A program made the translations under genes and the position numbers. The notes beneath the pieces were generated by a model, which was given only the letters and a program-made list of their open reading frames with translations, did no database searches and was not told the origin of the DNA. Shown piece by piece: positions 6,424 to 55,000 of a DNA stretch of 64,000 nt. The DNA is from Mustelus asterias. Lineage: Eukaryota. Location: the NCBI RefSeq assembly GCF_964213995.1, contig NC_135808.1, forward strand, positions 24,676,001 to 24,740,000, in the 5' to 3' direction. How positions within the stretch are numbered: position 1 is the first letter of the stretch; the number at the start of each line of letters is the position of its first letter.

Positions 6424-7600
6424 CTATTTGGACTTCAGTAAGGCCTTTGATAAATTTCTATATGGCAGGCTGCTCTGGAAGGTGAGATCACATGGAATCC
6501 AGGGAGAGCTGGCAAATTGCTGATGTAATTGTCGTGATGATAGGAAGGAGAAGGTAATGGTGGAAGGGTGCTTGTCGGACTGGATGCCTGTGACTAGTGT
6601 ATGCCCCAGGGGTCGGTGCTGGGCCCATTGCTGTTTGTTATCTATATCAACAATTTGGATGAGAATGTACACGGCATGATCAGTAAGTTTGCAGAAGACA
6701 CTAAAGTAGGTGGTATTTTAGGCAGTGAGGAAGCTTGTCAAAAATTGGAGCAGGATCTTGATCAGCTGGAGAAATGGGCCGAGAAATGGCAAATGGAGTT
6801 CAACACAGATGAGTGTGAGCTGTTGCATTTTGGAAAGTCAAATCAAGCTCAGACTTTAACAGTGAATTGTAGGACCTTAGGGAGTTTCGTTGAACTTAGG
6901 GACCTTGGAGTTCAGGTGCACAGTTCTCTGAAAGTGGAGTCACAGGTAGATAGGGCAGTGAAGAAGCCTTTTGGCACGCTGGCCTTCAGTCAAGTCACTG
7001 AGTATAGAAGTTGGGAAGTTATGTTGCAGTTGCACAGGACGTTGGTGAGGCCGCACTTGGAGTATTGTGTTCAGTTTTGGTCGCCCTGCTACAGGAAATA
7101 TGTTATTAAACTCGAAAGAGTACAGAAGAGATTTACAAGGATGTTGCCAGGACTGAAGGGACTGTGTTGTAGGGAGAGATTGGACATGCGAGGACTTTTT
7201 TCCTTTGGAGCGTAGGAGACTAAGGGGTGATCTTGTAGAGGTATATAATAAGATCATGAGGGACATGGATAGGGTGAATGCACTCAGTCTTTTTCCCAGG
7301 GTTGGGGAATCGAGAACTCGAGAGCATAGGTTTATGTTAAGAGGGGAAAAAATTAATGGAAACCTGAGGAGCAACTGTTTTACACAGAGAATGGTACATA
7401 TGTGCAAAGAGCTGCCGGAGGAAGTGGTTGAAGCAGGGACATTGACAACATTTAAAAGGCATTTGGACAGATACATGGATCTGAAAGGTTTAGGGGGATA
7501 TGGGTCAAATACAGGCAAATGGAGTTAAGTTAGATGGATATTTTGGTCGGCTAGGGCCAGTTTCGGCCAAAGGGCCTGCCTCTGTTCCGTAGATTCTATG
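6424..7600 (+). mobile_element. CR1 LINE, 5'-truncated (RT C-terminal half plus 3' tail)
   Basis: [26 protein letters not shown] and LEYCVQFWSP motifs; ends GATTCTATG. Confidence 0.92.
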
Positions 7601-18189: not shown

Positions 18190-21100
18190 AATTAGCAGCA
18201 AGAACAGATTTCAAAAAGGAAGGTCAGGTACTAGAGAGTACCCCAGTGGCTGTGCCCCTTAAAAATAAGCACTCCTGTTTGAGTGCTGTTGAGGGGAGCA
18301 GCCTACCTGGGGGAAGCAATAGTGGCCGTGCCTCCGGCGCAGAGTCCGGCCCGGCAGCTCAGAAGGGTAGGGGAAGGGAGGATGAGCAAACTAACCGCCG
18401 CACCAAGGTACAGTGAGCCGTCCAAGTGGGGGGAGAAACAAGAAATGTAGTAGAAATTGGGGACAGTACACTTTTGGATGCCTTTGGGGGGGGGGGGGGG
18501 AAGACTGAGCAGGGGTAAGCCATAGTGTACAGGTCGCTGACTCAGAGTCTGTCCTTGTGGCTCAGAAGGGAAGGGGGGAGAGGTGTAGAGGATTAGTCAT
18601 TGGGGACTCCATAGTTGAAGGGACGGACAAGAGATTCTGCGGGAACGAGAGAGACTCGCGGTTGGTGTGTTGCCTCCCAGGAGCCAGAGTCCACGATGTC
18701 TCGGATCGTGTTTTCGAAATCCTTAAGGGGGAGGGGGACCTGCCCCAAGTTGTGGTTCACATAGGTACTCAAGACATAGGTAGGAAAAGGGGTGGGGATG
18801 TAAGGCAGAAATTCAGGGAGTTAGGGTGGAAGCTTAGGGCTAGAACAAACAAAGTTGTTATCTCTGGTTTGTTACCCGTGCCACGTGATAGTGAGGAGAG
18901 GAATAGGGAAAGAGAGCAGTTGAACACGTGGTTACAGGGATGGTGCAGGAGGGAAGGTTTCAGATCCCTGGACAATTGGGGCTCTTTCTGGGGTAGGTGG
19001 GACCTCTACAAACAGGATGGTCTGCACCTGAACCAGAGGTGTACCAATATCTTGGGGGAGAAAATTTGCTAATGCTCTTCGGGAGGGTTTAAAGTAATTC
19101 AGCAGGGGGGTGGGTACCTGAATTGTAGCTCCGGTGTGCAGGAAGTTATGATGTGGAGATGCCGGCGTTGGACTGGGGTAAACACAATAAGAAGTTTAAC
19201 AACACCAGGTTAACCTGGTGTTGTTAAACTTCTTACTGTGCAGGAAGTTGACAGTAGTGAGGTCATGAATGAGGTTTCAGGGTCGCAGGAGTGTACTAGC
19301 AGGCAGGAAGGTGGTTTGAAGTGTATATACTTCAACGCCAGGAGAATCCGGAATAAGGTGGGTGAACTTGCAGCATGGGTTGCTACCTGGGATTTCGATG
19401 TTATGGCCATCTCGGAGACATGGATAGAGCAGGGACAGGAATGGTTGTTGCAGGTTCCAGGGTTTAGATGTTTCAGTAAGTGCAGGGAAGGTGGTAAAAG
19501 AGGGGGAGGTGTGGCATTGTTAGTCAAGGACAGTATTACGGTGGCAGAAAGGACATTGAGGAGGACTCGTCTACTGAGGTAGTTTGGTCTGAGGTTAGAA
19601 ACAGGAAAGGAGAGGTCACCCTGTTGGGAGATTTTTATAGATCTCTGAAAAGTTCCAGAGATGTACAGGAAAAGATTGCAAAGATGATTCTGGATAGGAG
19701 CGAAAGTAACAGGGTAGTTGTACTGGGGGACTTTAACTTTACAAATATTGACTGGAAAAGCTATAGTTCGAGAATTTTGGAGGGGTCGGTTTTTGTCCAA
19801 TGTGTGCAGGAAGGCTTCCTGACACAGAATGTAGAAAGACCAACAAGAGGCGAGGCCACATTGGATTTGGTACTGGGTAATGAAACAGGCCAGGTGTTAG
19901 ATTTGGAGGTAGGTAAGCACTTTAGTGACAGTGACCGCAATTCGATTACGTTTACCTTAGCTATGGAAAAGGATAGGTATATACCAAAGGGCAAGAGTTA
20001 TAGCTGGGGGAAAGGAAATTATGATGCGGTTTGGGGAGATTTAGCTGGCATAGGGGAAGGAAACTGCAGGGGATGGGCACAATTGTAATGTGGAACTTGT
20101 TCAAGGAACAGCTACTACACGTCCTTGATAAATATGTACCTGTCAGGCAGGGAGGAAACAGACGTGTGAGGGAACTGTGGTTTACTCAGGAGATTGAATC
20201 TCTTGTGAAGAGGAAGAAGGAGACTTATGTTAAGATGAGACATAAAGGCTCAGTTAGGGAGCTTGAGAGTTACAAGTTAGCCAGGAAGGACCTAAAGAAA
20301 GAGTTAAGAAGAGCCAGGAGCGGACATGAGAAGTCTTTGGCAGGTAGGATCAAGGAAAACCCGAAAGCTTTCTATAGGTATGTCAGGAGTAAAAGAATGA
20401 CGAGGGTAAGATTAGGGCCAGTCAAGGACAGGAGTGGGAAGTTGTGCGTGGAGTCTGAAGAGATAGGAGAGGCACTAAATGAATATTTTTCGTCAGTATT
20501 CACACTGGAGAGGGACAGTGTCGAGGGGAGTACTGAGATGCAGGCTGTTGGACTGGATGGGATTGAGGTTCATAAGGAGGAGGTGTTAGCAATTCTGGAT
20601 AGGGTAAAAATATATAAGTCCCCTGGGCCGGATGGGATTTATCCTAGGATTCTCTGGGAGGCTAGGGGGGAGATTGCAGAGCCTTTGGCTTTGATCTTTG
20701 GGTCGTCATTGTCTACTGGAACAGTGCCAGAAGACTGGAGGATAGCAAATGTTGTCCCCTTGTTCAAAAAGGGGAGTAGGGACAACCCTGGTAATTATAG
20801 ACCAGTGAGCCTTACTTCTGTTGTGGGCAAAGTATTGGAAAGGATTATAAGAGATAGGATTTATAATCACCTGGAAAGGAATAATTTGATTTGGGATAGT
20901 CAGCACGGTTTTGTGAAGGGTAGGTCGTGCCTCACAAACCTTATTGAGTTCTTTGAGAAGGTGACCAAAGAGGTGGATGAGGGTAAAGCGGTTGATGTGG
21001 TGTATATGGATTTCAGCAAAGCGTTTGATTAGGTTCCCCATGGTAAGCTTTTGCAGAAAATACGGACACATGGGATTGAGGGTGATTTACTGGTTTGGAT

Positions 21101-22971: not shown

Positions 22972-24585
22972 TTCAAGTTCCATATTTGTGACTCTGTAAA
23001 TGGAACTGTGGTCATGGTTTGTCAGGAATTCCTCTATCTGGAGCTGCACATTTAAAGCTATTCTGATCTGCCCTATCATCCTGCACAAACTTGAGGAACC
23101 TGTCTCGTTCACTGCAAACTCAGTCACCTGTTTCTGCAATCTGTCACTTTGCTGCAATGTCTTTCACTTCCTGCCTCTGTGAAGCCTTCAATACAAAACT
23201 AATATTGCTGGGGTAGGGTAACACCACTGCAGTGCAGAACATTTCAAGACATGGGCGGCATGGTGGCACAGTGGTTAGTACTGCTGCCTCACAGTGCCAG
23301 GGTCCTGGGTTCAATTCCCAGCTTGGGTCACTGTCTGTGTGGAGTTTGCACATTCTCCGCGTGTCTGTGTGGGTTTCCTCCGGATGCTCCAGTTTCCTCC
23401 CACAGTCCAAAGATGCGCAGTTGAGATGGATTGGCAATGCTACAATTGCCCCTTAGTGTCAGGGGGACTAGCTAGGGTAAATGCATGTTGAATTCAGAAC
23501 AGCTTGTGGATGCGGCCCTGTGCCGTCCGCTGAGGGGAATGGTCTGGCCCGTTAAGCAATAGCTCTGAGTTGAGTTTGATTGCACTGTGCAACTGCTGCG
23601 ATTCGAGCTCCAAGTAGAGTTGACATCAGCAGGTGAATAGTCGATTTTGTGAATCCAGTATTCCATTGTTTAGTGGCGAATTTCCCAGTTTTTTATTGAG
23701 CTGCATTCCTTGTTGACTTGGCTGACTTCCACAGTCAGAGAGAGAGATTTGAGATATACCTGTAAAAGGGCCACTGTAGTGTGTGATCACCCCCATGAAC
23801 ATAGAACATAGAACATTTCAGCACAGAAACAGGCCTTTTGGCCCTTTTTGCCTGTGCCGAACCATTTTTGTGCCTAGTCCCACTGACCTGCACCTGGACC
23901 ATATCCCTCCACACCCCTCTCATCCATGTACCTGTCCAAGTTTTTCTTAAATGTTAAAAGTGCATTCACCACCTCATCTGGCAGCTCATTCCAAACTCCC
24001 ACCACTCTGTGCGAAGAAGCCCCCCCTAATATTCCCTTTAAACTTTTCCCCCCTCACTCTTAACCCATGTCCTCTAGTTATTTTCTCCCCGAGCCTCAGT
24101 GGAAAAAACCTGCTTGCATTCACTCTATGGATACCAATCATAATTTTATACACCTCTATCAAATCTCCCCTCATTCCTCTATGCTCCAGGGAATAAAGTC
24201 CTAACCTATTCAACTTTTCTCTGTAACTCAGTTTCTCAAGTCCCGGCAACATCCTTGTAAACCTTCTCTGCACTCTTTCAACCTTATTAATATCCTTCCT
24301 GTAATTAGGTGACCAAAACTGCACATAATACTCTAAATTCGGCCTCACCAATGTCTTATACAACTTCACCATAACATTCCAACTCCGATATTCAATACTT
24401 TGATTTATAAAGGCCAATGTACCAAAAGCACTCTTTACGACCCTATCTACCTGTGATGCCACTTTTAGGGAATTATGTATCTGTATTCCCAGATCTCTCT
24501 GTTCTACTGCACTCTTCAGTGTCCTACCATTTACCTTGTATCTTCTACCTTGGTTTGTCCTTCCAAAGTGCAATACCTCACACTT

Positions 24586-26981
24586 AGAACATAGAACATT
24601 ACAGCGCAGTACAGGCCCTTCGGCCCTCGATGTTGCGCTGACCAGTGAAACCAATCTAAAGCCCATCTAATCTACACTATTCCAATATCATCCATATGTT
24701 TATCCAATAACCATTTGAATTCTCTTAATGTTGGCGAGTCCACTACTGCTGCAGGCAGGGCATTCCACGCCCTGACTACTCTCTGACTAAAGAACCTACC
24801 TCGAAAATCTGTCCTATATCTCTCACCCCTCAATTTAAAGCTATGTCCCCTCGTGTTAGCCATCACCACCCGAGGAAAAAGGCTCTCACTATCCACCCTA
24901 TCTAATCCTCTGATCATCTTGTATGCCTCTATTAAGTCACATCTTAACCTTCTTCTCTCTAACAAAAACAACCTCAAGTCCCTCAGTCTTTCCTCACACG
25001 ATCTTCCCACCATACCAGGCAACATCCTGGTAAATCTCCTCTGCACACTTTCCAACACTTCCATGTCTTTCCTATAATGTGGCGACCAGAACTGTACGCA
25101 ATACTCCAAGTGCGGCCGCACCAGAGTTTTGTATAGTTGCAGCATGACTTCATAGCTCCGAAACTCAATCCCTCTCCCAATAAAAGCTAACACACCGTAC
25201 GCCTTCTTAACAATCCTATCAACCTGGGTGCCAACTTTCAGGGATCTATGCAGATGGACACCCAGATCCCTCTGTTCATCCACACTACCAAGTATCTTAC
25301 CATTAGCCCAGTACTCTGTATTCCTGTTACTCCTTCCAAAGTGAATCACCTCACACTTTTCCGCATTAAGCTCCATTTGCCACCTCTCAGCCCAACTCTG
25401 CAGCTTATCCATGTCCCTCTGTAACCTGCCACTTCCCTCCGCACTGTCTACAACTCCACCAACTTTAATGTCATCCGCAAATTTACTAATCCATCCTTCT
25501 ACGCCCTCATACAGGTCATTTATAAAAATGACAAACAGCAGTGGCCCCAAAACAGATCCTTGTGGTACACCACTAGTAACTGAACTCCAGGATGAATATT
25601 TCCCATCAACCACCACACTCTGTTTTCTTACAGCAAGCCAATTCCTGATCCACACCACTAAATCACCCTCAATCCCATGTGTCCGTATTTTCTGCAACAG
25701 CTTACCATGGGGAACCTTATCATATGCTTTGCTGAAATCCATATACACCACATCAACCACTTTACCCTCATCCACCTCTTTGGTCACCTTCTCAAAGAAC
25801 TCAATAAGGTTTGTGAGGCACGACCTACCCTTCAAAAAATCGTGCTAACTATCCCTCATCAAATTATTCCTTTCTTGGTGATTATAAATCCTATCTCTTA
25901 TAATCCTTTCCAAAACTTTGCCCACAACAGAAGTAAGGCTCACCGGTCTATAATTACCAGGGTTGTCCCTACTCCCCTTCTTGAACAAGATTTTCTATCC
26001 TCCAGTCTTCTGGCACTGTTCCTGTAGACAATGACGACACAAAGATCAAAGCCAAAGGCTCAGCAATCTCCTCTCTAGCCTCCCAGAGAATCCTAGGATA
26101 AATCCCATCTGGCCCAGGGGACTTATTTATTTTTACCCTTTCCAGAATTGCTAACACCTCCTCCTTATGAACCTCAATCCCGTCCAGGCCAACAACCTGC
26201 ATCTCAGTACTCCCCTCGACAACACTATCCTTCTCCTGTGTGAATACCGACGAAAAATATTGATTTAGTGCCCCTCCTAGCTCTTCAGACTCCATGCACA
26301 ACCTTTGACAAGGTTCCGCATGGGAGGTTAGTCAGGAAGGTTCAGTAGCTAGGTATACATGGAGGGGTAGTAAATTGGATTAGACATTGGCTCAATGGAA
26401 GAAGCCAGAGAGTGGGAGTGGAGGATTGCGTCTCTGAGTGGAGGCCTGTGACTAGTGGTGTGCCACAGGGATCAGTGCTGGGTCCATTGTTGTTTGTCAT
26501 CTATATCAATGATCTGGATGATAATGTGGTAAATTGGATCAGGACGTTTGCTGATGATACAAAGATTGGCTGTCCTTGACTGGCCCTAATCTTACCCTAG
26601 TCATTTCTTTTACTCCTGACATACCTATAGAAAGCTTTAGGGTTTTCCTTGATCCTACCTGCCAAAGACTTCTTATGTCCCCTCCTGGCTCCTCTTAACT
26701 CTTTTTCTTTAGGTCCTTCCTGTCTAACTTGTAACTCTCAAGCGCCCTAACTGAGCCTTCACGTCTCATCTTAACATAAGTCTCCTTCTTCCTCTTCACA
26801 AGAGATTCAACCTCTTTAGTAAACCACGGTTCCTTCACACGACTGCTTGCTCCCTGCCTGACAGGTACATATTTATCGAGGACGCGTAGTAGCTGTTCCT
26901 CGAACAAGCTCCACATTACAATTGTGCCCATCCCCTGCAGTTTCCTTCCCCAACCTATGCCACCTAAATATTGTCTGATTA
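24586..26981 (-). mobile_element. Nested CR1 LINE (subfamily A, same as 18190-21907)
   Basis: RT ORF 24672-25835 is near-identical to 20900-21820; flanked by duplicated ACTT (24582-24585, 26982-26985). Confidence 0.92.
26302..26569 (+). repeat. Inverted copy of 27086-27353 inserted into the nested CR1
   Basis: Reverse complement of neighbouring CR1-B sequence, including the atypical AGGACGTTTGCTGATGAT motif. Confidence 0.85.
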
Positions 26982-28338
26982 ACTTGTCTGCATTAAACTG
27001 CATCTGCCATTTTTCAGCCCATTTTTCTAGCTGGTCCAAATCCCTCTGCAAGCTTTGAAAGCCTTCTTCACTGTCCACTACACCTCCAATCTTTGTATCA
27101 TCAGCAAACGTCCTGATCCAATTTACCACATTATCATCCAGATCATTGATATAGATGACAAACAACAATGGACCCAGCACTTATCCCTGTGGCACACCAC
27201 TAGTCACAGACCTCCACTCAGAGAAGCAATCCTCCACTACCACTCTCTGGCTTCTTCCATTGAGCCAATGTCTAATCCAATTTACTACCTCTCCATGTAC
27301 ACCTAGCGACTGAACCTTCCTGACTAACCTCCCATGCGGAACCTTGTCAAAGGCCTTGCTGAAATCCAGGTAGACAACATCCACTGCCTTCCCTTATCCA
27401 CTTTCTTGGTAACCTCCTCGAAAAACTCTAATAGATTGGTTAAACATGACCTACCACGCACAAAGCCATGTTGCCTCTCCCTAATAAGTCCCTGTCTATC
27501 CAAATATTTGTAGATCCTATCTCTTAATACTCCTTCCAATAATTTACCTGCTACTGACGTCAAACCTACCGGCCTATAATTTCCCGCATTACTTTTTGAA
27601 CCTTTTTTAAACAATGGAACAACATGAGCTATCCTCCAATCATCCGGCACCTCACCTGTGGATACCGACATTTTAAATATATCTGCCAGGGCCCCTGCAA
27701 TTTCAACACTAGTCTCCTTCAAGGTCCGAGGGAATACCCTGTCCGGTCCTGGGGATTTATCTACTCTGATTTGTCTCAAGACAGCAAGCACCTCCTCCCC
27801 TTTAATCTGTATAGGTTCCATGACCTCCCTACTTGTTTGCCTTATTTCCATAGACTCCATGCCAGTTTCCTTAGTAAATACGGATGCAAAAAACCCACTT
27901 AATATCTCCCCCATTTCTTTTGGTTCCATACATAGCCGACCACTCTGATCTTCAAGAGGACCAATTTTATCCCTTACTATCCTTTTGCTCTTAATATACC
28001 TGTAGAAGCACTTAGGATTATCCTTCACCTTGTCTGCCAAAGCAACCTCATGTCTTCTTTTAGGCTTCCTGATTTCTTTCTTAAGTAGTTTCTTGCACTT
28101 TTTATACTCCTCAAGCATCTTATTTGCTCCCTGTTGCCTATACATGTCATACATCTCTCTCTTCTTCTTTATCAGAGTTCCAATATCCCTCGAGAACCAA
28201 GGTTCCTTATTCTTATTCACTTTGCCTTTAATCCTGACAGGACCATACAAACTCTGCACTCTCAAAATTTCACCTTTACAGGCCTCCCACTTACCATTCA
28301 CATCCTTGCCAGGGAACAGCCTGTCCCAATCCATGACT

Positions 28339-28420
28339 TGCATGGGGAATCAGTCATTGACCTCCCAGTAGGACTCATTGAATATGAGCTCCCTGGGAAT
28401 TGGTAATTAACCAACCAGAT
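28339..28420 (+). mobile_element. LTR fragment related to the 7621/9256 LTRs
   Basis: Shares GGGAAT..TTGACCTCCCAGTA.GACTCAT..GGCAATT-like sequence. Confidence 0.5.
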
Positions 28421-33927: not shown

Positions 33928-34829
33928 CTATTGTTTATTAATGAAACGGATAATTGATGTAAACGGATATTTCAGCGCGCTCTTGAACTGATCCCTGAAC
34001 TTAGACTGAGTCACTCCATATATAAATGCATTTGTGCAGCAACTTAAATCCACCAGCATAACTCCAACTTGATCAAATATATATAAAGAATCGTTATAAT
34101 TTGCGGGATTAGTTCCTGAAATTATATCATATAAGAAATTTGTAACATATAAAAACCATAAGAGTATGAAGCTCCCAGATATGGTGAAGAGTAAAATCAT
34201 AGACTTCCTTCTGCCCTCCATCTCTGGGTCACTGCGATTATCGCATTTGCTCTGACCCCTCAGTCCCTTCCGTACTCGACTGGTCACTAAAATATATCTG
34301 ACTGTAAGAGTGTTGAGCAATAGAATTGAAACATATGGGATCAATGGAGTTGAAACCGTTTCAAACCATTCAAATGCCACCCATCCTGGGTCAGTATAAT
34401 AACTTGGTTTTTCATTACAGAACCAGGGGACATTGTCGATTATCTCTCTAGGTTCAAACCTAAAGTAGATCGGAATGGCTTTTAAACACATCAGGGTGCA
34501 AGTGGTTGATAGTACTGCAGCTGCAGTTTGTTCGGTGCAGTATTTCGTTTTCAGCTTCTGACAACAAATGGCCACAAATCGATCGAAGGAGAAAGTGACG
34601 GTGAACCAGACAGAACAGTTCACAGTTGCATAAAGCAGTACAAAGATAATAGTACATGCAGGGGTGATGTTCAGTAAAGATCCTGGGAAAAAGTAGCTGA
34701 TCCGATATAATATGACCGCAGTGATAATCACCAGAAGATCTGCCGCTGCCATGGCCACGAGGTACCGAGTAGTACAGCTGGAGAGACCGCAGTTTCTCCG
34801 GGACAGGATCACGATTGCCATTAAATTAA
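33928..34829 (-). CDS. GPR139/GPR142-like orphan class A GPCR, exon 2
   Basis: Acceptor ctcccatacAG. Open 300-codon frame with AAADL (TM2), CSVWFTVTFSFDRFVAICC (TM3), TM5 PLIPY, SGSFILLW (TM6) and CCTNAFIYGVTQSKFR (TM7/H8). Confidence 0.92.
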
Positions 34830-35399
34830 CTGTATGGGAGGGATAAAAATGTAGACTGTAAGTTACTGATCCAGCATTCTCCATATCGGCTGGGTTGGTG
34901 TGGGGCATCAGCTGATTGTTTGAAATAGATCTTTATTTACCCAAAGACAATTTAAACTTGCAAATATCTGTGCTTAACAGAATTAGGATTGTGGGCTCTG
35001 GGAGGGGTTATCATAATTTCTTTTATTTTTTAATAAACTTCAAATAATCTATTGCACATACGTCACAGACACAGTTCTCAGACTTTGGGCAATGTGAAAG
35101 GTGAAAGAGGGATGAGCACAACTTCAAGGCTAAGGCAAGTGTCTTCATAACACCTCTTATGTGCAAGGGGAAAGTAGTAGTTTTCTTGCTTCACCTCCAC
35201 CTTGCACGCAATACACAAACTCCACCACCGCCTCAACCCCATCCAAACAGAAAGGAACCCGAAGCAGCCATCAGTCCCTGCATGTCCAGACAACCACGCC
35301 CAGTAACGAAGTTAGAACGGAACAGAACTGCTCCTGAAGAGTGCTATGAAGCCTCGCCCGCCCTACCTCCGCCGAATGTGGAGAGAGCCCTGACAACTG

Positions 35400-46299: not shown

Positions 46300-47310
46300 A
46301 CACAATGAAAGGTGATTGTGGGAATTGGAGGTCAGTCATCTCAACTATTGGGACATCACTGCTGCAGGTACACAAGAAGGTGCCTGAGACGCAATCATCT
46401 TCAGCTGCTTCATCAATGACCGTGCCCTATCCGAAAGTCATAAGTGTGGTTTTTCGCTCATTAATGCACAATATTCAGCACCGTTCGCATCTCCTCCGGT
46501 ACTGAAGTAGTAAGAACTGGATCATTACTCAGTCCTGGACTGGCAAGTAGCAAGTAACATTCCCAACACACAAGTACCAGGTAAGGACCATCCTCAAACA
46601 TAAAGGTGCGAAATATTCTCATTACATTCAATAGAATTGCCATTGCTGAATTCCCATGCTTTCAATATCCTAGGCTGGTACGACTAAACTGAAATCGAAT
46701 TGGACTTGATAGAGAAATACTGTGGCTCGAAGTGCAGATAAAAGGCTGGGAAATCCGTGGGGAGCAAGACACTTCCTAAAGCCGACATGCTGCCCACAAT
46801 CTACAAGGCAGAAGTCAGCAGGGTGATGGAATACTCAACATTTGTCTGGATATCTGCAGCTGGAACAACACTCAAAACGCTCGAAACCATCCAGGAGAAA
46901 GCAATGCGCTTCATTGTCAACACCTCACCCCCCAAAAAAGAAACATTAATACCCTTCACCACTAATAACCAATGCCAGGCGTGTATACCATCTACACCAT
47001 ACATTGGATCACCTCGTTTTTTTCTTCGACAGCACTTTGCAAACCCACATCATCTACAATCTAAGAAAAAGGGAAGAGGCCTCTTGGAAAAATACCAAAC
47101 TGGAAGTTTCTTCCCATCCGGTCACCATCCTGACTTCAAAATATGACGCTGCTCCTTCACTGTTACCCAGTCAACATCCAGGAACTCCCTCGCTAACAGG
47201 ACTGCAGTGCACCAAGAAGAGGGCCCACCACCAGCTTCTTAACGCCAATTAGGGGAGGGCAATAAATGCTGGCATTACCACCGATGTGCACAACCTTTGA
47301 CAAAAGACCC
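46300..47310 (+). mobile_element. Degenerate LINE (L2/CR1 group) RT 3' end
   Basis: IYKAEVSRVMEYS...LETIQEKA; 3' end GGGCAATAAATGCTGG is shared with about 32840. A related fragment lies at 42830-43080. Confidence 0.65.
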
Positions 47311-47346
47311 TGAATGTTTAGTCATTAAACTTAAGGCCGAGCTCTT

Positions 47347-47674
47347 TTTTTAAATACTTTTCCAATTCAATCAAATCAAATCCAATTCAGAGTCTCAACA
47401 AGTTGAGACATTTCAGATCCAGGCTGACAAGACAGGGCGAGCGACCAAATCACCCTGTCCTGGGCCTGATCTCCATGAGCCAAGTTGATTGGAGGAGCAA
47501 AGCAACACCTCCTCCAAGACTTGAGCTCATTTGCATCTTAGCCAAAAGGCCGGGATGCCGCTTTTAAAAATTGCTTCATATGAAACATATGAAGCCTCAA
47601 TGTAACCCAATGACCTCAACCAAGTGCAGCATCCAATCCATACTACACTTGATCTTCGCCAAAAGGCCGAGAAG
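47347..47674 (-). mobile_element. U2 snRNA-headed short retroposon (SINEU-like), two U2 heads
   Basis: Minus-strand 5' end CTTCTCGGCCTTTTGGCGAAGATCAAGTGTAGTAT matches vertebrate U2 nt 5-39 with one mismatch (U2 sequence recalled). Second U2 piece CGGCCTTTTGGCTAAGAT at 47552-47535; short A tail; 18-bp TSD ACTTAAGGCCGAGCTCTT (47329-47346, 47675-47692). Confidence 0.88.
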
Positions 47675-48403
47675 ACTTAAGGCCGAGCTCTTATATTAAT
47701 TCAGCATTCCTCCCAGTTCCTATCTCTGCAGCTTGTCCCAAAATGAAATACGGAAACTGGATTTAAGCACCCCCTTTCAAAGTGCAGCTGTCTCACTTCA
47801 TTCCTTGCACTAGTATTGTCTATGCAGCATTAGTGCTGTATTTGATGCCCTCTGAGATGGGTTCCAGATGGATCTCACTCAGTCTAGCATCCCCCAATAA
47901 GGGGTACCTGGGGTGTTACAATGGGCTGTTAATTTTCATGCAAAGCTCCTGTTGAAGCGATAGAATAGTGAGAAGCTTAAATGAAACAAAAAGAAATGCA
48001 TTGGGTGACAGTCAGAAAATGTGTTCACGCAATCCAGGAAAAGGGAAAATAATTTTAAAAAAGTAAGTAAACCAGATGGGAGCAAAAGAAATATGTGATT
48101 AATTGTGGACAACGGCCCTGCAGTCATCCGCAAACTGCAGATCTGGTTTGTTGATGGTGGTGAATTAAATTTTGGCACTGAGGCATCTGAGGTTAAAGAA
48201 CTTTCCATCCAGAATGGACTTAATAGTTGACTTCTGGTCAGCTGAATAGCCACTTTCAGGTAGATTGCGAATATTAAGGTGGTTTATCAACCTTGATGGA
48301 CACAGGTCCACATCTTCACATTAATAACCATGGTATCAGCAAAATACTGCGGATGCTGCTGAAAAATCTCATCAGGTCTGACAGCATCTGTGGGGAGAGA
48401 ATA

Positions 48404-48445: not shown

Positions 48446-49162
48446 ATGCAAAGAGAATATGCAGACATTTATATTTTAAGGGTCGGAAGATGGGGGTGGA
48501 ATTGAACAAAAGCAATGGAAACGAGGATACAGAAGGCTGGGAAGATGCTAAGAGTGTCCATTAAGTGATGAGAATGCAGGAATGGCAGAACACAGGTACG
48601 GATTGTTAAAGGACTGCCTGAGGAATGTGGCAGTTGCAGTGAAGGAGAGCTGGAATGGAGAAGTGAAAATATATAACTGAAAAAGGATGATTAAATGGAT
48701 GAATGATAGGACTTGAAATGAAATAAAATAAATTGAAATGGGGTGACGGTGGAGGAGAGAGTTCATCCTCTGAAGTCGTTGAACTCAATGTTCAGTCCAG
48801 AAGGCTGTGAAGTGCCCAATCGCAAGGTGGGGTGCTGTTCCTCCACTTTGTGTTGGGGTTCGATAGAACATTGCAAAAGGCCGAGGATGAACATATGGAC
48901 AGGAGAGCAGGGTGGTGTGTCGAAGTGGCAAGCGACCAGAAGGACTGTGTCCTGTTTGCCGACGGACTGAGTGTGTTCAGAAAAGCGGTCACCCTGTCTG
49001 CATTTTGTCTCTCCGATATAGAGTTGACTGCATTGGAATCAGCGAATGCAATAGTGCTGTTTGTAGGAGGTGCATGTGAACCACTGCTTCACCTGAAAGG
49101 AATGTTTTGGACCCGTGACGCAGGGAAGAAGTAAAGGAGCAGGTGTTACACCCTCTACGATT

Positions 49163-49520: not shown

Positions 49521-52084
49521 TGCATGGGAAGATGCCGTGGGCAGTGGGTGAGGAGTTGGGTGTGATGGAGGAGTGGATCAGCCTATCCCAGAACGAGTGG
49601 TCCCTGTGGAATGCTGACAGCGGGGGCGAAGGGAAGCTGTGTTGGGTAGTGGCATCATGCTGGAGTTGGCAGAAATGGCTGAGGATAGTCCTTTGAATGG
49701 GAACAGAAAATACTGGAAAATCTCAGCAGGTCTCACAGCCTCTGTGGGGAGAGAATAGTCCCAACATCTCGAGTCTAGATGACCCTTCGACAGAGCGGTC
49801 TGTATTGCCATTAATGGGTTTACCATGTGAAAACAAACAGATTAAAGAAGGCCAGGGCTATCGCTCAGCAAGTATGGACCCACTGAAATCCATAAGCACT
49901 TGGGGCTCAGTCATTTTGGAATAGAACCATAGAAAATTTCAGCTCAGAAACCGGCCTTTTGGCCCTTCTTGTCTGTGCCGAACCATTTTTTGCCCAGTCC
50001 CACTGACCTGCACTTGGAATAGAACCATAGAAAATTTTCTTCAATTTTCTTAAAGGTTTATTTGTTAGTGTTACAAGTAGGCTTATAGTAACACTACAGT
50101 GTGAAAATCCCCTAGTCGCCACACCCCGGCACCTGTTGGGGTACATTGGGGTAGAATGTAGCCTGGCCAAAGCACTGAACCTTCACGTCTTTTGTCTATG
50201 GGAGGAAACCAGCGCATCCGCACAGACAGTCATCCAAGCTGGGAACCAAACCTAGGTCCCTGGCGCTATGATTCAGCAGTGCTAACAACTGTGCCAATTG
50301 AAACCTCAACCGTGGAGAATTAATAACAGTGCACAATGACAGATCACAGGACTATACCATACCAATCCCAATGTATTAGAAAGAATCAGATGAGTATATT
50401 GCAGATGTTACAGATATAACCTTCCAATGTTTCACCATGTCGGGAACTACTTGATCAATAAGGTTCTGTTCACTCAAGTTAAAGAAGTGCACAAAGGCCA
50501 ACTCCCAGTTCAAGATATGAAAGGTGCAGATGTGATGCAGTTGGCTGGCGAGAAGCCAGACATCTTAAACAATCCTGAGATTGGTGATGGCGTAATACAT
50601 TCTATTAAGCAGCGTGCTCTGTTGGTGTGGTTGGGTTACCGAGTTGTGCAGGTTAGGTGGATTGGCCGTGCTAAATTGCCCCTTAGTGTCAGGAAGACTA
50701 GTTAGGCTAATACAGGGGGTTATGGGGACAGGGCCTGGGTGAGGTTGTGGTCGTTCCAGACGATAGGCTGAATGGCCTCCTTCTGAACTGTACGATTCTA
50801 TGACTCTCATAAACCTGAGCTGCAAAGGTGTCTGGGAAAGGGGAGCAGAGATTGAATGTGATGGAAGTGTGGGCCAAGTTTTCCACGCCACAAAGAGGTG
50901 AGGGCACCCTGCTTATCCTTATAACTGTGTGCAAGATATTCAGCTGTTCCATTGACCCAGGCCTGCGAAGAATGACCACTTAGAGCCATAGCAGTGACGG
51001 AAATCAGAGGCTGCTCGGCACTTTAAATAATTGAAGCAGATTGTTTTCTTCCACTTGTAACGTGTCTCCAATGCAGCCAATAGTGAGCAAGTTTGTGCTA
51101 TGCGGATATTGGTGAGTGAATTTCGTTTGAATTTTAAACTTTAAATCAACACATGCTGCGTCAGAAGTTGAATGGTAAACCATAATTTCTAGCTACATTT
51201 TCGTTTTCTCTCTTACAGTTAAGTGTAGTGGCGATTGCAGTCCTGACCTGAGGGAAGTGCAGCCTTTCCACTTTCACCACTCGCTACATGGTGGCCATGG
51301 CAATGGTAGATCTGCGAGTCATTATCAACGCTGTCATATTCTTAGGAATCAGTTCTTATTATTTGCTGTCATCTTTTTGGAACATCGCCCCTGTTTGCAG
51401 TGTTAGCTTCATCCTGATTTATGCAGCTGCGGAATGTTCTGTCTGGTTCATTGTCGTTTTCTCCTTTGATAGATTTGAGACCATTTGTTGCTCGAAGATT
51501 GAAACAAAATATTGCTCCGAGAAAACGGCAGTTGTTGTTCTTTCGACGACTTGAACTCTACTCTGTTTAAAAGCCAACCTGGTCAATTCAGACCTGAACC
51601 TGGAGAGGTAATTGACAATGTTCCCTTGTTCCGTAATGACAAGCAAAGCTATTATACTGATCTTGGGTGGCATTTAATTTATTTGATAGCATTTTTACAA
51701 CATTGCTCCAGTTGACTACAATTATGTTGCTCAATGCTATGACAGTCAGATATATTTTAGTGACGTGACGAGTCCTTAAGGGACTGAGGGGTCAGAACCA
51801 GGGAGAGAATCGCAGTGACCCAGAGGTGGAGAGCAGAAGGAAGTCTGTGATTTTGCTCTTCCCCTTTTCTGGCAGTCTCATACTTCAATGGATTTTAAAT
51901 GGAATCAAGTTGTCGTGTGTTGGAGTGCAGGAGGTAATCACGAATATTACAATGATTCCTTGAAAGTCTTTGTGAAAATCAGACCGATGCTGGTGGATTT
52001 AAATTGCGATACAAACGCATTTATTATGTAGTGGCCCAATGCAAGTTCAAAGAACAGTTCAAAAGTCTGGTGAAATATTCGGTT

Positions 52085-55000
52085 TGTCGAAATCTCGACT
52101 TCTGAGTTTGACTTTATCGCAAACACACATAAACACAATATACTTAACAGACAGATTGTCTTTATTTACTTGCTAGCAAGGGGACGGTCTTGACACAATG
52201 GGTCAGAGGCACCACTCCACCGGACCAAAGAAAACCATCCTGGTTTATCCAATTCTGCAGCTCACAGTCAGTTAGGCACAATCCAATCAAAAGTGTTACA
52301 AATGACATACTTTAAGTATTGATCCAATAGAATGAAAGTACTGAACCACGCTGATGTACAAGATCACGATACCTCGTGGGATAACCCAATATATCATCCC
52401 TAAGCCTGTCTTCTAGTCTTTTAATCAGACATCATGTCTCTATTTTGATAGCAGCCTCACAAAATATCTTCACGAAAACAGTCTCACATGGACATTCTTT
52501 AATTGAGAAAGGGGTCATACAAAGGCCATTAGCATTTTAGGGCCTTGTCAGTGAAGTTAACTGAATCTCTAAGGGATATGGTCAACTCAACTTGGCCTCA
52601 GAATATTCCCTGATTATAGCCCTGATATGTTTGTTTATGGCCAACATAATGAAACACGTGTATATATTGCTTATCAATTCAATGACTGACCTTTTTATCA
52701 CTACCTACAATTTCGAGGGGTGTCATCATGTTTCTATTAATCATTGTCAGTTCCCATTAAGTCCCCAACCATAACTCTTTCGTTAGCTGTGATACTCATG
52801 TCTTTCTGACTCTGTTTTGATTAGAAACTGTGAAGGCAGCCTCATTAAAACTCACTCTTGTATCAGTTGTTTCTGATAAAGGATCTGGTAAGGCAATTAA
52901 GTGTCCTTTATGGCCTTGTGATTCCAACAGTTGGATGCTTTAAATGAATGTATCTAACGTATGTTTAGTATCAAAGGACACTCTATAACTGTGCATCTAA
53001 ATTTCTTTGTTTAACTTCTAAAAATATACAGAAGATATATTTATATTTATAGACTAATTGAAGGTATTAAACATATCTTTAAAAGTACAAAGTACTAAAA
53101 ACACCTAATTACAATTACGAACAAACTTGGTCCCCATTGATAAAATGAATTCTACATCTAAGTTTGATTAAACAGAAAACTCAAGCAGAGTCTGGCAATC
53201 TCGGAGTAACCCTTTTCTTTTCTATCTTTCGACATGCCCTCCTCTTGTCCTTGTCAAGGACAACAATTTCAATCTAACTGAATCTTGTAAAGTCTCTTCA
53301 TTTCCTTGTCTACTGCATTCTCTGAGAGTTCTGGAGTTGTTATTATCATCATAGTGGCTACAGCTCCTGGTATAACTGCATTTCCAAACCGTGCACGGCA
53401 ACACTTTATCATGGCAAATACCAGACATCGGGTAACGATAACGGCCAAAAATACGATTAACCCATGTACTAGGAACCTACCTATTGCTCCTAAACATCAC
53501 CCCACCCAACCCAAAAATTCTCGAAGAATCTGGTTCCTTAAACATCTTATCCTTCTTTTGGACATGGTCCACTAAACTACCAATTTCATCAGAATACTTG
53601 GGGATATATGTACAGCATTCAGACCTTATTATCGCACATGTCCCACCTTTTTCAGCAAACAAATAATCTCGGGCCATCCTGTTCTGTAAAGTCACTGTCC
53701 TAATGGCTCTCATCTCATTGCTTAACCCTTTTATAGCTTTTGTGATTTCATTTGCCACCACTTCTAATAATTTAACTATTTTTATTATTTCGACTGAGGT
53801 AAATCCCATTCCAACAGAGGGAAAAGGGGTGGAGAAGGATTGTTGTGTTTCTGTAAGAGCGCGTTTATACCAATAAAGGGGGTGATGTGCTGGGGAGGGC
53901 AAATGATGGATATAAGACATTACATATCCCAGGTAACATGACCCTTCCCAATTTAATGGCAACCAGGGATATGCTTTATGTCGATACAACAAAGTATGTT
54001 CCATTTAAGGTTCACAAACTGATACCATTTCCTTCAGTTATAGTGTTTGCAAATGTGCGGATCAGTGAAATGTCACACTTACTTGTTCCTGCATTCCATC
54101 CACCTGTCTGTATGCTGACCAGACAAATTGCCCCATTGGGTCTCCCTTGTTCTGTTGTGTTAGTAAGGAACAAGAGAGGGGGCTTCTGAGAAAGGTTATA
54201 ATGAGCTTGGAACCTTCCATTAAATTTATTCATATTACACCCAGCTGATTCCCAATGTTCCCTGCTATTCCCTCGTCGTTCCTTAAGAAGGACTATTGTT
54301 CTGGTTTTGGGCGACATTTTCTGATTCAGCCACCATTCTGATTCATTGAAAGGAATTGGACTTAAAGGAATACCTCCTTCGGGTGCGTCGGTACATGAGT
54401 ACACACCCAACAGCTGGAAGCGTTGATATCCTTGGCATAGGTGTATCACATGTGCATGAAGGTATTTATGTGCAATTCACACAATACATGTATTATATAT
54501 GTCACAAGAAAATATAGAGTCTTAATGTCCAGTTTCCTATATCGATGAGGCTGATGATTCCTTTTCCTCGGGACCTGGAGCCCATTTGCAATGCGATGCG
54601 TGGATCCATGACGGTCTTTCCTTCACCTTGATCGCAGTGTTGGTGGTCAGCAAGACGTGAGAGGGGCCCTCAAATCGTGGGTGAAGACTATTCTCTCTTT
54701 TAAACACCTTCACATGAAAGACGTCGCCCAGTTCTAAGTTGTGGCACCTCCCTTCTGTGGGATCAGTCTGAGCTTCCTTTACCTGGGAATGGAAACTAGA
54801 AATACATTTTGTTAACGCAATACAATCGTTTAGCACATTTTCTTCCATTCTGTGGATATTCAAATGCTTAACAGAAATAAAAAGGCAAATGTTACGGGCT
54901 TGTGTGGTAATAGCCCAATTGTTCTGTTTGTTGCTGACCGCATTACCATTACTGCTCAGGGTAACAGTTGAACCGATTTTATTCCGGTTTCCACACAATG

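What the first reader, a model, noticed from the sequence alone, without database searches (positions are those of the whole stretch)
47329..47692. Dimeric U2 snRNA-headed, hairpin-packed retroposon: candidate shark SINEU family or structured ncRNA
Seen: a 328-nt insert on - with an 18-bp TSD and a short A tail. It starts with U2 nt 5-39, including the branch-point pairing GUAGUA, and has a second exact 18-nt U2 piece (47552-47535). The body is a run of stems: GCTTCATATG/CATATGAAGC (47573-47595) followed by an Sm-site-like AAUUUUUA; TTGGAGGAG/CTCCTCCAA (47489-47517) nested in ATGAGC/GCTCAT; GACAGGG/CCCTGTC (47431-47459); GTCTCAAC/GTTGAGAC (47392-47409). TTGCTCCTCCA resembles U2 stem-loop III. 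Known: snRNA-headed SINEU families occur in crocodilians, and long TSD plus A tail is the L1/Tx1 signature, unlike the CR1-tailed SINEs elsewhere here. Inference: an independent U2-derived SINE, or the retrocopy of a novel snRNA-like RNA that might interact with Sm proteins or branch points.
Basis: partly seen in the sequence, partly recalled or inferred. Interest (0 to 1): 0.82.

Follow-up and report, generated by a model that had tools for sequence, protein, structure and literature searches.

The report
U2-headed short retroposon in a shark
This is a 328-base, hairpin-rich retroposon copy that begins with the first part of U2 spliceosomal RNA, most likely one member of a shark counterpart of the crocodilian SINEU elements rather than a new working small RNA.

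Summary
A 328-nt insert lies on the minus strand (47674..47347) between two exact 18-bp direct repeats, and it ends in a short A run. It starts with U2 nt 5-38/39 (Rfam U2, 38.4 bits, E 2.8e-5, below the gathering score of 46). It carries a second 18-nt U2 stem-loop I piece. It folds far better than shuffles (z -8.9), while the neighbouring flank is ordinary (z -0.6).

Best reading (0.7): one copy of a U2-headed, non-coding, SINEU-like retroposon moved by a Tx1/L1-type LINE.

New here: the head stops within one base of the site where the U2-specific LINEs Keno and Utopia insert. The next ~44 nt fold back over the head.

I could not align other copies, so the evidence for a family is indirect. 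Words of the element stand in 20 runs under 14 organism labels. Unchecked first-reader notes of this scan describe similar 317-353-nt U2-headed elements on other pieces of this genome.

The snRNA-like functional reading is not supported: without its U2 pieces the body matches no Rfam family.

The parts
47675..47692 (-). 5' copy of the 18-bp target site duplication
   Evidence: Exact match to 47329-47346.
47640..47674 (-). U2-derived head. It matches U2 nt 5-39, and the last base may instead belong to the element, making it nt 5-38.
   Evidence: cmscan alignment to U2 model positions 5-39 with one mismatch. The end coincides with the Keno/Utopia insertion point at nt 38|39.
47596..47639 (-). 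Fold-back (antisense) arm. It pairs with almost the whole head in three helices of 15, 8 and 4 bp, 8 of the 27 pairs being G-U.
   Evidence: MFE fold and pair count.
47573..47595 (-). Perfect 10-bp hairpin with a 3-nt loop
   Evidence: Inverted repeat I1, 100% complementary; present in the fold.
47564..47572 (-). A-U5-A-A run: the 'Sm-like' site and also an oligo-T stretch
   Evidence: Read. The U run of 5 is at 47570-47566. No Rfam support.
47533..47558 (-). Second, internal U2 piece. 47552-47535 equals U2 nt 10-27, it folds as a stem-loop I-like hairpin, and its ends are degenerate.
47475..47530 (-). Nested hairpin: an 11-bp outer helix around a 9-bp helix with an 11-nt loop
47415..47472 (-). 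Composite hairpin: a 9-bp outer helix and a 13-bp inner helix
47392..47409 (-). 7-bp hairpin with a 4-nt loop
47347..47391 (-). A/T-rich tail with short GATTT-like repeats, ending in A5
   Evidence: Read.
47329..47346 (-). 3' copy of the 18-bp target site duplication
   Evidence: Together with the next 10 nt it aligns to the Keno 3' target motif at score 9, which 936 of 127,944 window positions reach.

Best explanation
This is a dead copy of a short, non-coding retroposon of the SINEU kind, headed by U2 snRNA. It was inserted by target-primed reverse transcription by a LINE of the L1/Tx1 group.

Shown:
- A 328-nt insert with an exact 18-bp target duplication and a short A tail.
- A head equal to U2 nt 5-38/39.
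- An older-looking internal U2 piece.
- No ORF of note.
- A very stable chain of hairpins.

Inferred:
1. The RNA is made by RNA polymerase II or by read-in from outside, not by polymerase III, because runs of 4, 5 and 4 U lie inside it.
2. The head is the upstream half of the U2 target of a Keno-like Tx1 LINE. A master copy sitting at nt 38|39 of a U2 gene would be transcribed from the U2 promoter and would carry U2 nt 1-38 along. The alternative origin is a template switch of the reverse transcriptase onto U2 RNA, which Kojima proposed for crocodilian SINEU.
3. A second round of the same process explains the internal U2 piece.
4. The arm after the head folds back over it. This buries the branch-point-pairing stretch and gives a rod that the LINE protein may recognise.
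5. The LINE endonuclease nicked the bottom strand at CTCTT|AT and the top strand 18 bp away.
For: - Anatomy: TSD, tail; U2 alignment; longest ORF 54 aa, longest stop-free stretch 81 aa.
- Structure: with the flank control.
- U runs inside the element. Kojima uses the same argument against polymerase III for SINEU.
- Match to the published SINEU description: snRNA head, repeated 5' addition of U1/U2 pieces, polyA tail, a 16-bp TSD for SINEU-3, Tx1 partners that cluster with Keno, and some Tx1 carrying the same U1/U2 heads.
- Head boundary: the U2 3' flank of Utopia starts at nt 39 and is identical to that of Keno, with nt 1-38 expected upstream. The Keno 3' target begins TCTGTTC, which is positions 39-45 of the consensus printed. 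The head's identity ends at position 39.
- Family, indirect: sampled 31-letter words of the stretch stand in 20 listed runs from 14 studies under 14 organism labels. Shares are 0.42-0.61 in four runs of organism A, 0.35-0.39 in organism B, 0.26 in C and 0.23 in D, and the holders include small runs of 33 to 924 million letters. Single-copy DNA of a multi-gigabase genome should rarely be assembled from so few letters. This rests on my recollection of how Logan drops words seen once, and on an assumed genome size.
- Unchecked first-reader notes list U2-headed elements of 317-353 letters on other pieces of this genome: 22 notes hold 'SINEU' and 77 hold 'U2 snRNA', in 816 windows. They also list Keno-like Tx1 LINEs with a U2 cap and an antisense arm.
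Against: - I never saw a second copy. There is none in the 64-kb window.
- Nothing was retrievable through protein, metagenome or genome searches.
- No LINE partner was seen, so a shared tail or head with a Tx1 is untested.
- The run kinds are unknown ('?'), so enrichment or RNA cannot be excluded. No run is on record as RNA.
- The bases at the nick itself (CTCTT|AT) do not resemble the Keno nick in U2.
- The U2-likeness of the target is modest (p about 0.007, post hoc).
- U2-loop-like 12-13-mers also occur by chance in ordinary repeats of this window.
- A head ending at nt 38/39 could also arise from a template switch into the single-stranded part of U2.
Confidence: 0.7

Rival explanations
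1. A one-off chimeric retrocopy. A LINE reverse transcriptase copying some polyadenylated RNA switched templates onto U2 snRNA (twice), as in the human L1 chimeras headed by U6, U1 or U2. On this reading there is no family and no master copy.
For: No second copy in the window. Chimeras of snRNA with L1, Alu or mRNA pieces, carrying TSDs and A tails, are known (Kojima's discussion). A first-reader note mentions a U1-U4-U2 chimera elsewhere in this genome, so template switching onto snRNAs may be common here.
Against: Words of the element stand in 20 runs under 14 organism labels, some of them very small runs. First-reader notes describe elements of the same size and build elsewhere in the genome. 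Two ordered U2 pieces plus a fold-back arm fitted to the head is a lot for a single accident. The snRNA part covers only nt 5-38/39 and is not full length.
Confidence: 0.1
2. An internally deleted Tx1 (Keno-like) LINE, that is, a non-autonomous LINE. Its first ~115 nt would be the LINE's own U2 cap plus 5' UTR, and its last ~190 nt the LINE's 3' UTR. This is a sub-case of the best explanation that differs in origin and classification, so its probability lies inside the 0.7 given there and is not additional to it.
For: Unchecked notes describe full-length Keno-like Tx1 LINEs in this genome with a U2 cap and a 5' UTR that 'starts with an antisense arm that can fold back over its U2 head'. That is the arrangement I find here. 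Kojima reports Tx1 families with the same U1/U2 heads as SINEU, and short elements such as Bov-A made of LINE ends.
Against: I have no LINE sequence to compare. The internal second U2 piece needs a further event.
Confidence: 0.3
3. A retrocopy of a working, structured snRNA-like RNA (a U2 variant, or a decoy for Sm proteins or branch points) whose source gene lies elsewhere.
For: Very strong, strand-biased predicted structure: -139.9 against -107.7 kcal/mol, with 15 G-U pairs. A U-rich run follows a hairpin. cmscan can stretch the U2 model over 203 nt.
Against: - The U2 score is below the gathering score.
- The body and linker alone match no RNA family at E below 0.1.
- The U-rich run lacks the G of the Sm consensus (recalled).
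- The branch-point-pairing stretch is buried in a 15-bp stem.
- By eye I see nothing like an snRNA proximal element upstream (consensus recalled).
- No run is on record as RNA.
- Structure alone does not show function.
Confidence: 0.05

Closest known systems
SINEU (SINEU-1, -2, -3) of crocodilians (Kojima 2015, PMC4494074)
   Same: A short non-coding retroposon whose 5' end is a piece of U2 snRNA. More than one snRNA piece has been stacked at the 5' side. It has an A tail, a TSD in the range of the 16-bp SINEU-3 one (18 bp here), internal oligo-T and no polymerase III promoter. Mobilisation by Tx1-type LINEs related to Keno is inferred for both.
   Different: The host is a shark, and the paper found none outside crocodilians. 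I could not compare the body with the crocodilian consensus sequences. The head is followed by an arm that folds back over it, and the body is a chain of long hairpins, neither of which is mentioned in the sections I read. The target here is not a Mariner element.
Keno (U2-specific Tx1-clade LINE) and Tx1-Mar LINEs with U1/U2 heads
   Same: The U2 piece of this element ends within one base of the point where Keno (and Utopia) split the U2 gene, at nt 38|39. Some Tx1-Mar LINEs carry U2 heads like those of SINEU.
   Different: This element is 328 nt long with no ORF. It lies outside a U2 gene. The bases at its nick do not look like the Keno nick, and only a 12-of-14 match to the downstream part of the Keno target is present.
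L1-made chimeric retrocopies headed by snRNAs (U6, U1 or U2 joined to L1, Alu or mRNA pieces), cited by Kojima from Buzdin 2002 and Garcia-Perez 2007
   Same: An snRNA piece at the 5' end, other sequence at the 3' end, an A tail and a TSD.
   Different: Those are single events. As I recall them, they usually hold the snRNA through to its 3' end. Here only nt 5-38/39 are present, twice, and the element appears to be multi-copy.
U2 snRNA genes and U2 retropseudogenes (Rfam RF00004)
   Same: 35 nt at the 5' end and a further 18 nt are U2 sequence.
   Different: Below the family threshold (38.4 against 46 bits). Stem-loops II to IV are not recovered when the U2 pieces are left out.

Membership tests
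SINEU (snRNA-headed SINE, Kojima 2015) | 5' region derived from a U1 or U2 snRNA gene | tested here: met
   cmscan aligns the first 35 nt to U2 positions 5-39 with one mismatch. The whole hit has E 2.8e-5.
SINEU (snRNA-headed SINE, Kojima 2015) | Short (under 500 bp) and non-coding | tested here: met
   328 nt. The longest ORF overlapping it is 54 aa, and the longest stop-free stretch is 81 aa including flank.
SINEU (snRNA-headed SINE, Kojima 2015) | 3' polyA tail and retroposition marks (TSD) | tested here: met
   An A5-7 tail, which is short, and an exact 18-bp TSD.
SINEU (snRNA-headed SINE, Kojima 2015) | Many copies with one shared structure (a transposing unit, not separate chimeras) | tested here: inconclusive
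   No second copy in the window and no copies retrievable. Words of the element stand in 20 runs under 14 organism labels. Unchecked scan notes describe similar elements.
SINEU (snRNA-headed SINE, Kojima 2015) | Mobilised by Tx1 LINEs (shared target preference or shared heads) | not testable with these tools
   No Tx1 LINE was identified in the window, and the clade of its RT ORFs was not determined. There are only hints: the head ends at the Keno site and the target partly matches the Keno target (p about 0.007).
SINEU (snRNA-headed SINE, Kojima 2015) | Sequence kinship of the body with SINEU-1, -2 or -3 | not testable with these tools
   Repbase and Dfam are not on hand. The paper's figures and supplements were not visible.
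U2 snRNA (Rfam RF00004) | Score at or above the curated gathering score | tested here: not met
   38.4 bits against 46. No gathering-level hit anywhere in the window.
U2 snRNA (Rfam RF00004) | Sm site and 3' stem-loops III and IV | tested here: not met
   With the U2 pieces left out, no U2 match appears at E up to 10.
L1-type snRNA chimeric retrocopy | A single event: snRNA copied to its 3' end, joined to a 5'-truncated LINE, SINE or mRNA | tested here: not met
   The U2 part stops at nt 38/39 and occurs twice. The words are found in many runs. The origin of the 3' part is unknown.
Non-autonomous (internally deleted) Tx1 LINE | 5' and 3' ends identical to those of an autonomous LINE | not testable with these tools
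   No LINE sequence is available. Only unchecked notes exist.

The most novel reading that the evidence does not exclude
The U2 head is not a random pick-up. It is the upstream half of the target of a U2-specific (Keno-like) Tx1 LINE. Master copies of this element, and of its LINE, would sit at nt 38|39 of U2 genes, borrow the strong external U2 promoter, and export RNAs that start with U2 nt 1-38. A fitted antisense arm would then hide the branch-point-pairing stretch of that head. If this is right, it answers the question Kojima left open for SINEU, namely how elements without any promoter of their own are transcribed and where their snRNA heads come from. It would also show the same solution arising in sharks and crocodilians.
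Probability: 0.4. Interest if true: 0.65.

Novelty: new member of a known kind. Interest (0 to 1): 0.5.

Why it matters
snRNA-headed SINEs have been described in one paper and one animal group. That paper found none outside crocodilians, and its author could not say how they are transcribed.

A shark family would be a second, very distant occurrence. A head that ends exactly where U2-specific LINEs cut the U2 gene offers a concrete and testable origin: co-transcription with the target gene, as is known for R2 in ribosomal DNA.

For genome annotation it matters in a plain way. These copies carry 35 nt of near-perfect U2 and can be mistaken for U2 genes or pseudogenes.

This single copy, sitting in repeat-rich DNA of an MHC class I region, has no visible effect of its own.

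Tried and rejected
- Second copy in the window: a local blastn (word size 9) found only the element itself, its internal U2 repeat and its palindrome. Other hits were 15 nt or shorter.
- U2-loop-like 12-13-mers at 48874-48885 and 49951-49963: on reading they lie in ordinary shark repeats, so I took them as chance.
- Flanks as a repeat: 47000-47328 and 47693-48100 have no other copy in the window, so a preferred target repeat could not be tested.
- Spurious-ORF trick to fish out other copies: the plus-frame 62 aa gave no candidate. The minus-frame 52 aa gave 5 hits at E up to 0.001. All were short stretches of 16-33 query residues, four of them in proteins with 4-7 matched stretches. I took them for low-complexity matches and did not follow them.
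- Exact look-up of 10 ORFs within 10 kb, hoping to fetch the same locus from other assemblies and find an empty site: 0 of 10 are on record.
- Pattern scans of metagenome contigs (2 scans) and prokaryote genome contigs (1 scan): 0 matches. These collections are unlikely to hold shark DNA, so the blanks say little.
- Rfam on the body and on the linker alone: only weak chance-level matches, the best being E 0.17 on the plus strand and E 0.3-0.5 on the minus strand. I therefore rejected the stem-loop III/IV and Sm readings.
- tRNA scan: none in the window, so there is no tRNA-linked target here.
- A PHROGs scan of the flanking ORF was pointless and blank.
- The flank as a decayed LINE ORF2 end rests on a weak BLASTP (E 0.04) and a recalled motif.
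- Papers: searches found no description of an snRNA-headed SINE in cartilaginous fishes in the held library. Only PMC4494074 uses the SINEU family names. Repbase and Dfam could not be consulted, so the family may already be catalogued there.
- What I saw of each paper:
  - PMC4494074: abstract, passages, and all of Results and Discussion.
  - PMC4640811: passages and the whole of section 6.
  - PMC6136364: four passages.
  - PMC5381603 and PMC5786205: passages only.
  - Kojima and Fujiwara 2004: not held, cited only through the others.
  - Figures and supplements were not visible. Fig 1B and supplementary figures S1-S6 of PMC4494074, and S4 Fig of PMC4640811, may show head extents and U2-like off-target sites that bear on my half-target claim.
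Full report
**What is there.**
On the minus strand an insert of 328 nt (47674 down to 47347) lies between two exact copies of the 18-mer AAGAGCTCGGCCTTAAGT, at 47692-47675 and 47346-47329. It ends in an A/T-rich tail with short GATTT-like repeats and five A (seven if the first two A of the repeat are counted). The longest ORF overlapping it has 54 codons, and the longest stop-free stretch is 81 codons including flank. The window holds no second copy: a local blastn with word size 9 found only the element, its internal repeat and its palindrome.

**The U2 parts.**
cmscan aligns the first 35 nt to positions 5-39 of the Rfam U2 model with one mismatch. It then stretches the model over 203 nt for 38.4 bits, E 2.8e-5 in a 5-kb search, below the gathering score of 46. 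Nothing in the whole window reaches a gathering score.

A second piece, 47552-47535, equals consensus positions 10-27 as printed. It is 90% identical over 21 nt to the head. A local alignment of the first 57 nt with the internal unit gives 42 identities in 60 columns, score 44.5. Shuffles gave 20.2 +/- 3.7, and 0 of 2000 reached the observed score. The internal unit therefore looks like an older, worn copy of head plus following sequence.

With the U2 pieces left out, the 188-nt body and the 84-nt linker match no RNA family at E below 0.1, and U2 does not reappear at E up to 10. The suggested likeness to U2 stem-loop III and the Sm-site reading have no support beyond the eye.

**The structure.**
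- The minus-strand RNA folds at -139.9 kcal/mol. Shuffles gave -93.3 +/- 5.2, so z is -8.92, and 0 of 100 shuffles fold as well.
- The plus strand reaches -107.7 kcal/mol, z -7.91.
- The fold has 116 pairs (54 A-U, 47 G-C, 15 G-U), and 71% of the bases are paired.
- The body alone has z -6.13, with 0 of 200 shuffles as good.
- The 329-nt flank next door has z -0.60, with 27 of 100 shuffles as good. The structure therefore belongs to the element and not to the region.

The 44 nt after the head fold back over almost all of it in helices of 15, 8 and 4 bp, and 8 of these 27 pairs are G-U. The U2 stretch that pairs with branch points lies inside the 15-bp helix. Eleven of the 15 pairs in that helix are Watson-Crick and four are G-U, so the RNA of this strand pairs better than its complement would. 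By eye, the arm differs from a perfect complement of the head only by transitions. I cannot tell whether that reflects selection for pairing, RNA editing of a once-perfect duplex, or chance.

**What it is.**
The anatomy is that of a retroposon inserted by target-primed reverse transcription with a long staggered cut, the L1/Tx1 style. The bottom strand was nicked at CTCTT|AT and the top strand 18 bp away (read). Runs of 4, 5 and 4 U inside the RNA argue against polymerase III, and no tRNA-like part exists.

Kojima's SINEU paper describes this kind of element in crocodilians:
- heads taken from U1 or U2;
- repeated addition of further U1/U2 pieces at the 5' end;
- polyA tails;
- a 16-bp TSD for SINEU-3;
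- internal oligo-T and no known promoter;
- partners in a Tx1 group that clusters with Keno, some of which carry the same snRNA heads.

That paper found no SINEU outside crocodilians. My searches of the held library found no later report for cartilaginous fishes. Repbase and Dfam could not be checked.

**Where the head may come from.**
The U2-specific LINEs Keno and Utopia insert at one point in U2. The downstream U2 part starts at nt 39, nt 1-38 are expected upstream, and the Keno and Utopia 3' flanks are identical. The Keno 3' target is quoted as TCTGTTCTTATCAGTTTAAT, which is positions 39 onward of the consensus.

The head of this element is identical to U2 up to position 39 and then departs. 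Position 39 is a T that could belong to either side. The head therefore ends within one base of the Keno site. If ends were spread evenly over about 190 nt, that would happen roughly 1 time in 60. That figure is my estimate, and ends made by template switching need not be spread evenly.

I read this as a hint that the head is the upstream half of the LINE's target, carried along when a master copy inside a U2 gene is transcribed from the U2 promoter. The rival origin is a template switch onto U2 RNA, which Kojima proposed for crocodilian SINEU. A first-reader note about a U1-U4-U2 chimera elsewhere in this genome would favour that rival.

**The target.**
The duplicated 18-mer holds a 9-mer equal to U2 nt 8-16 (read). 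The 28 nt from the nick onward align to the Keno target as CTTA--AGTTTAAT, score 9, and 936 of 127,944 positions of the window score as high (0.73%).

It is weak evidence all the same:
- it is post hoc;
- the offset from the nick differs by 1-3 nt from that in U2;
- the bases at the nick itself do not match;
- U2-loop-like 12-13-mers occur by chance in common repeats of this window.

The site lies in what looks like the decayed 3' end of a LINE ORF2 on the other strand. The evidence for that is weak: BLASTP E 0.04, no Pfam hit and a recalled motif.

**Is it a family?**
Directly, I cannot say. Every route to other copies failed or was closed:
- the protein-space tricks were blank;
- the DNA collections on hand hold no match.

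Indirectly, yes, on two lines.
- Of 31 sampled words of the stretch, 42-61% stand in four runs of organism A, 35-39% in two runs of organism B, 26% in C and 23% in D. There are 20 listed runs from 14 studies under 14 organism labels, several of them small (33 to 924 million letters). For a genome of several gigabases, single-copy DNA would seldom be assembled from so few letters. That argument uses my recollection that Logan drops words seen once, an assumed genome size, and run kinds that the tool marks '?'.
- This scan's first readers wrote 22 notes with 'SINEU' and 77 with 'U2 snRNA' in 816 windows of this genome. Among them are elements of 317-353 letters with a doubled U2 head and hairpins, and Keno-like Tx1 LINEs with a U2 cap and a fold-back arm. 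These notes are unchecked and are not independent evidence, but they tell where to look.

**Verdict.**
The SINE reading is the best one at 0.7. Within it, an internally deleted Tx1 is a live sub-case. A one-off chimera gets 0.1 and a working snRNA-like RNA 0.05. It is a new member of a known kind unless already catalogued.

Its main value is the head boundary at the Keno site and the fold-back arm. Together they turn the open question of how SINEU elements are transcribed into a simple genome-wide test.

**Limits.**
Depth, empty sites and expression therefore remain untested.

Noticed in passing
window 47319-47346 and 47675-47692: The duplicated target and the next 10 nt resemble U2 in two overlapping ways. 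A 9-mer equals U2 nt 8-16, and CTTA--AGTTTAAT resembles the Keno 3' target. The empirical frequency of such a score in the window is 0.73%.
   Followed up: partly
window 46757-47328 (+): The flank on the tail (3') side of the insert reads like a decayed C-terminal part of a LINE ORF2 (a YK..V....EY..W motif and a weak BLASTP to the LINE at 24 kb, E 0.04). If so, the element sits antisense in the 3' region of an older LINE. There is no Pfam hit.
   Followed up: partly
window 53477-54004 (-): A 175-aa ORF matches the retroviral envelope family TLV_coat (E 1.6e-10). It is part of an endogenous retrovirus about 6 kb from the insert. I only observed it.
   Followed up: no
window 33928-34908 (-): An intact 326-aa single-exon ORF with a full rhodopsin-type 7tm_1 domain (E 3.4e-22), lying in an MHC class I region.
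   Followed up: no
window 23986-28343 (-), 20031-21032 (+), 6601-7215 (+): Several LINE reverse-transcriptase ORF fragments (RVT_1). None shares sequence with the U2-headed element. None was identified as Tx1, and their clade was not determined.
   Followed up: partly
window 49940-50000 (+) and 48874-48885 (-): Common shark repeats contain 12-13-mers identical to the U2 stem-loop I region. This is a source of false U2-like hits in this genome.
   Followed up: yes
window 47618-47632 against the head: By eye, the fold-back arm differs from a perfect complement of the head only by transitions that turn Watson-Crick pairs into G-U. This could reflect selection for pairing, or editing of a former perfect duplex.
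   Followed up: no
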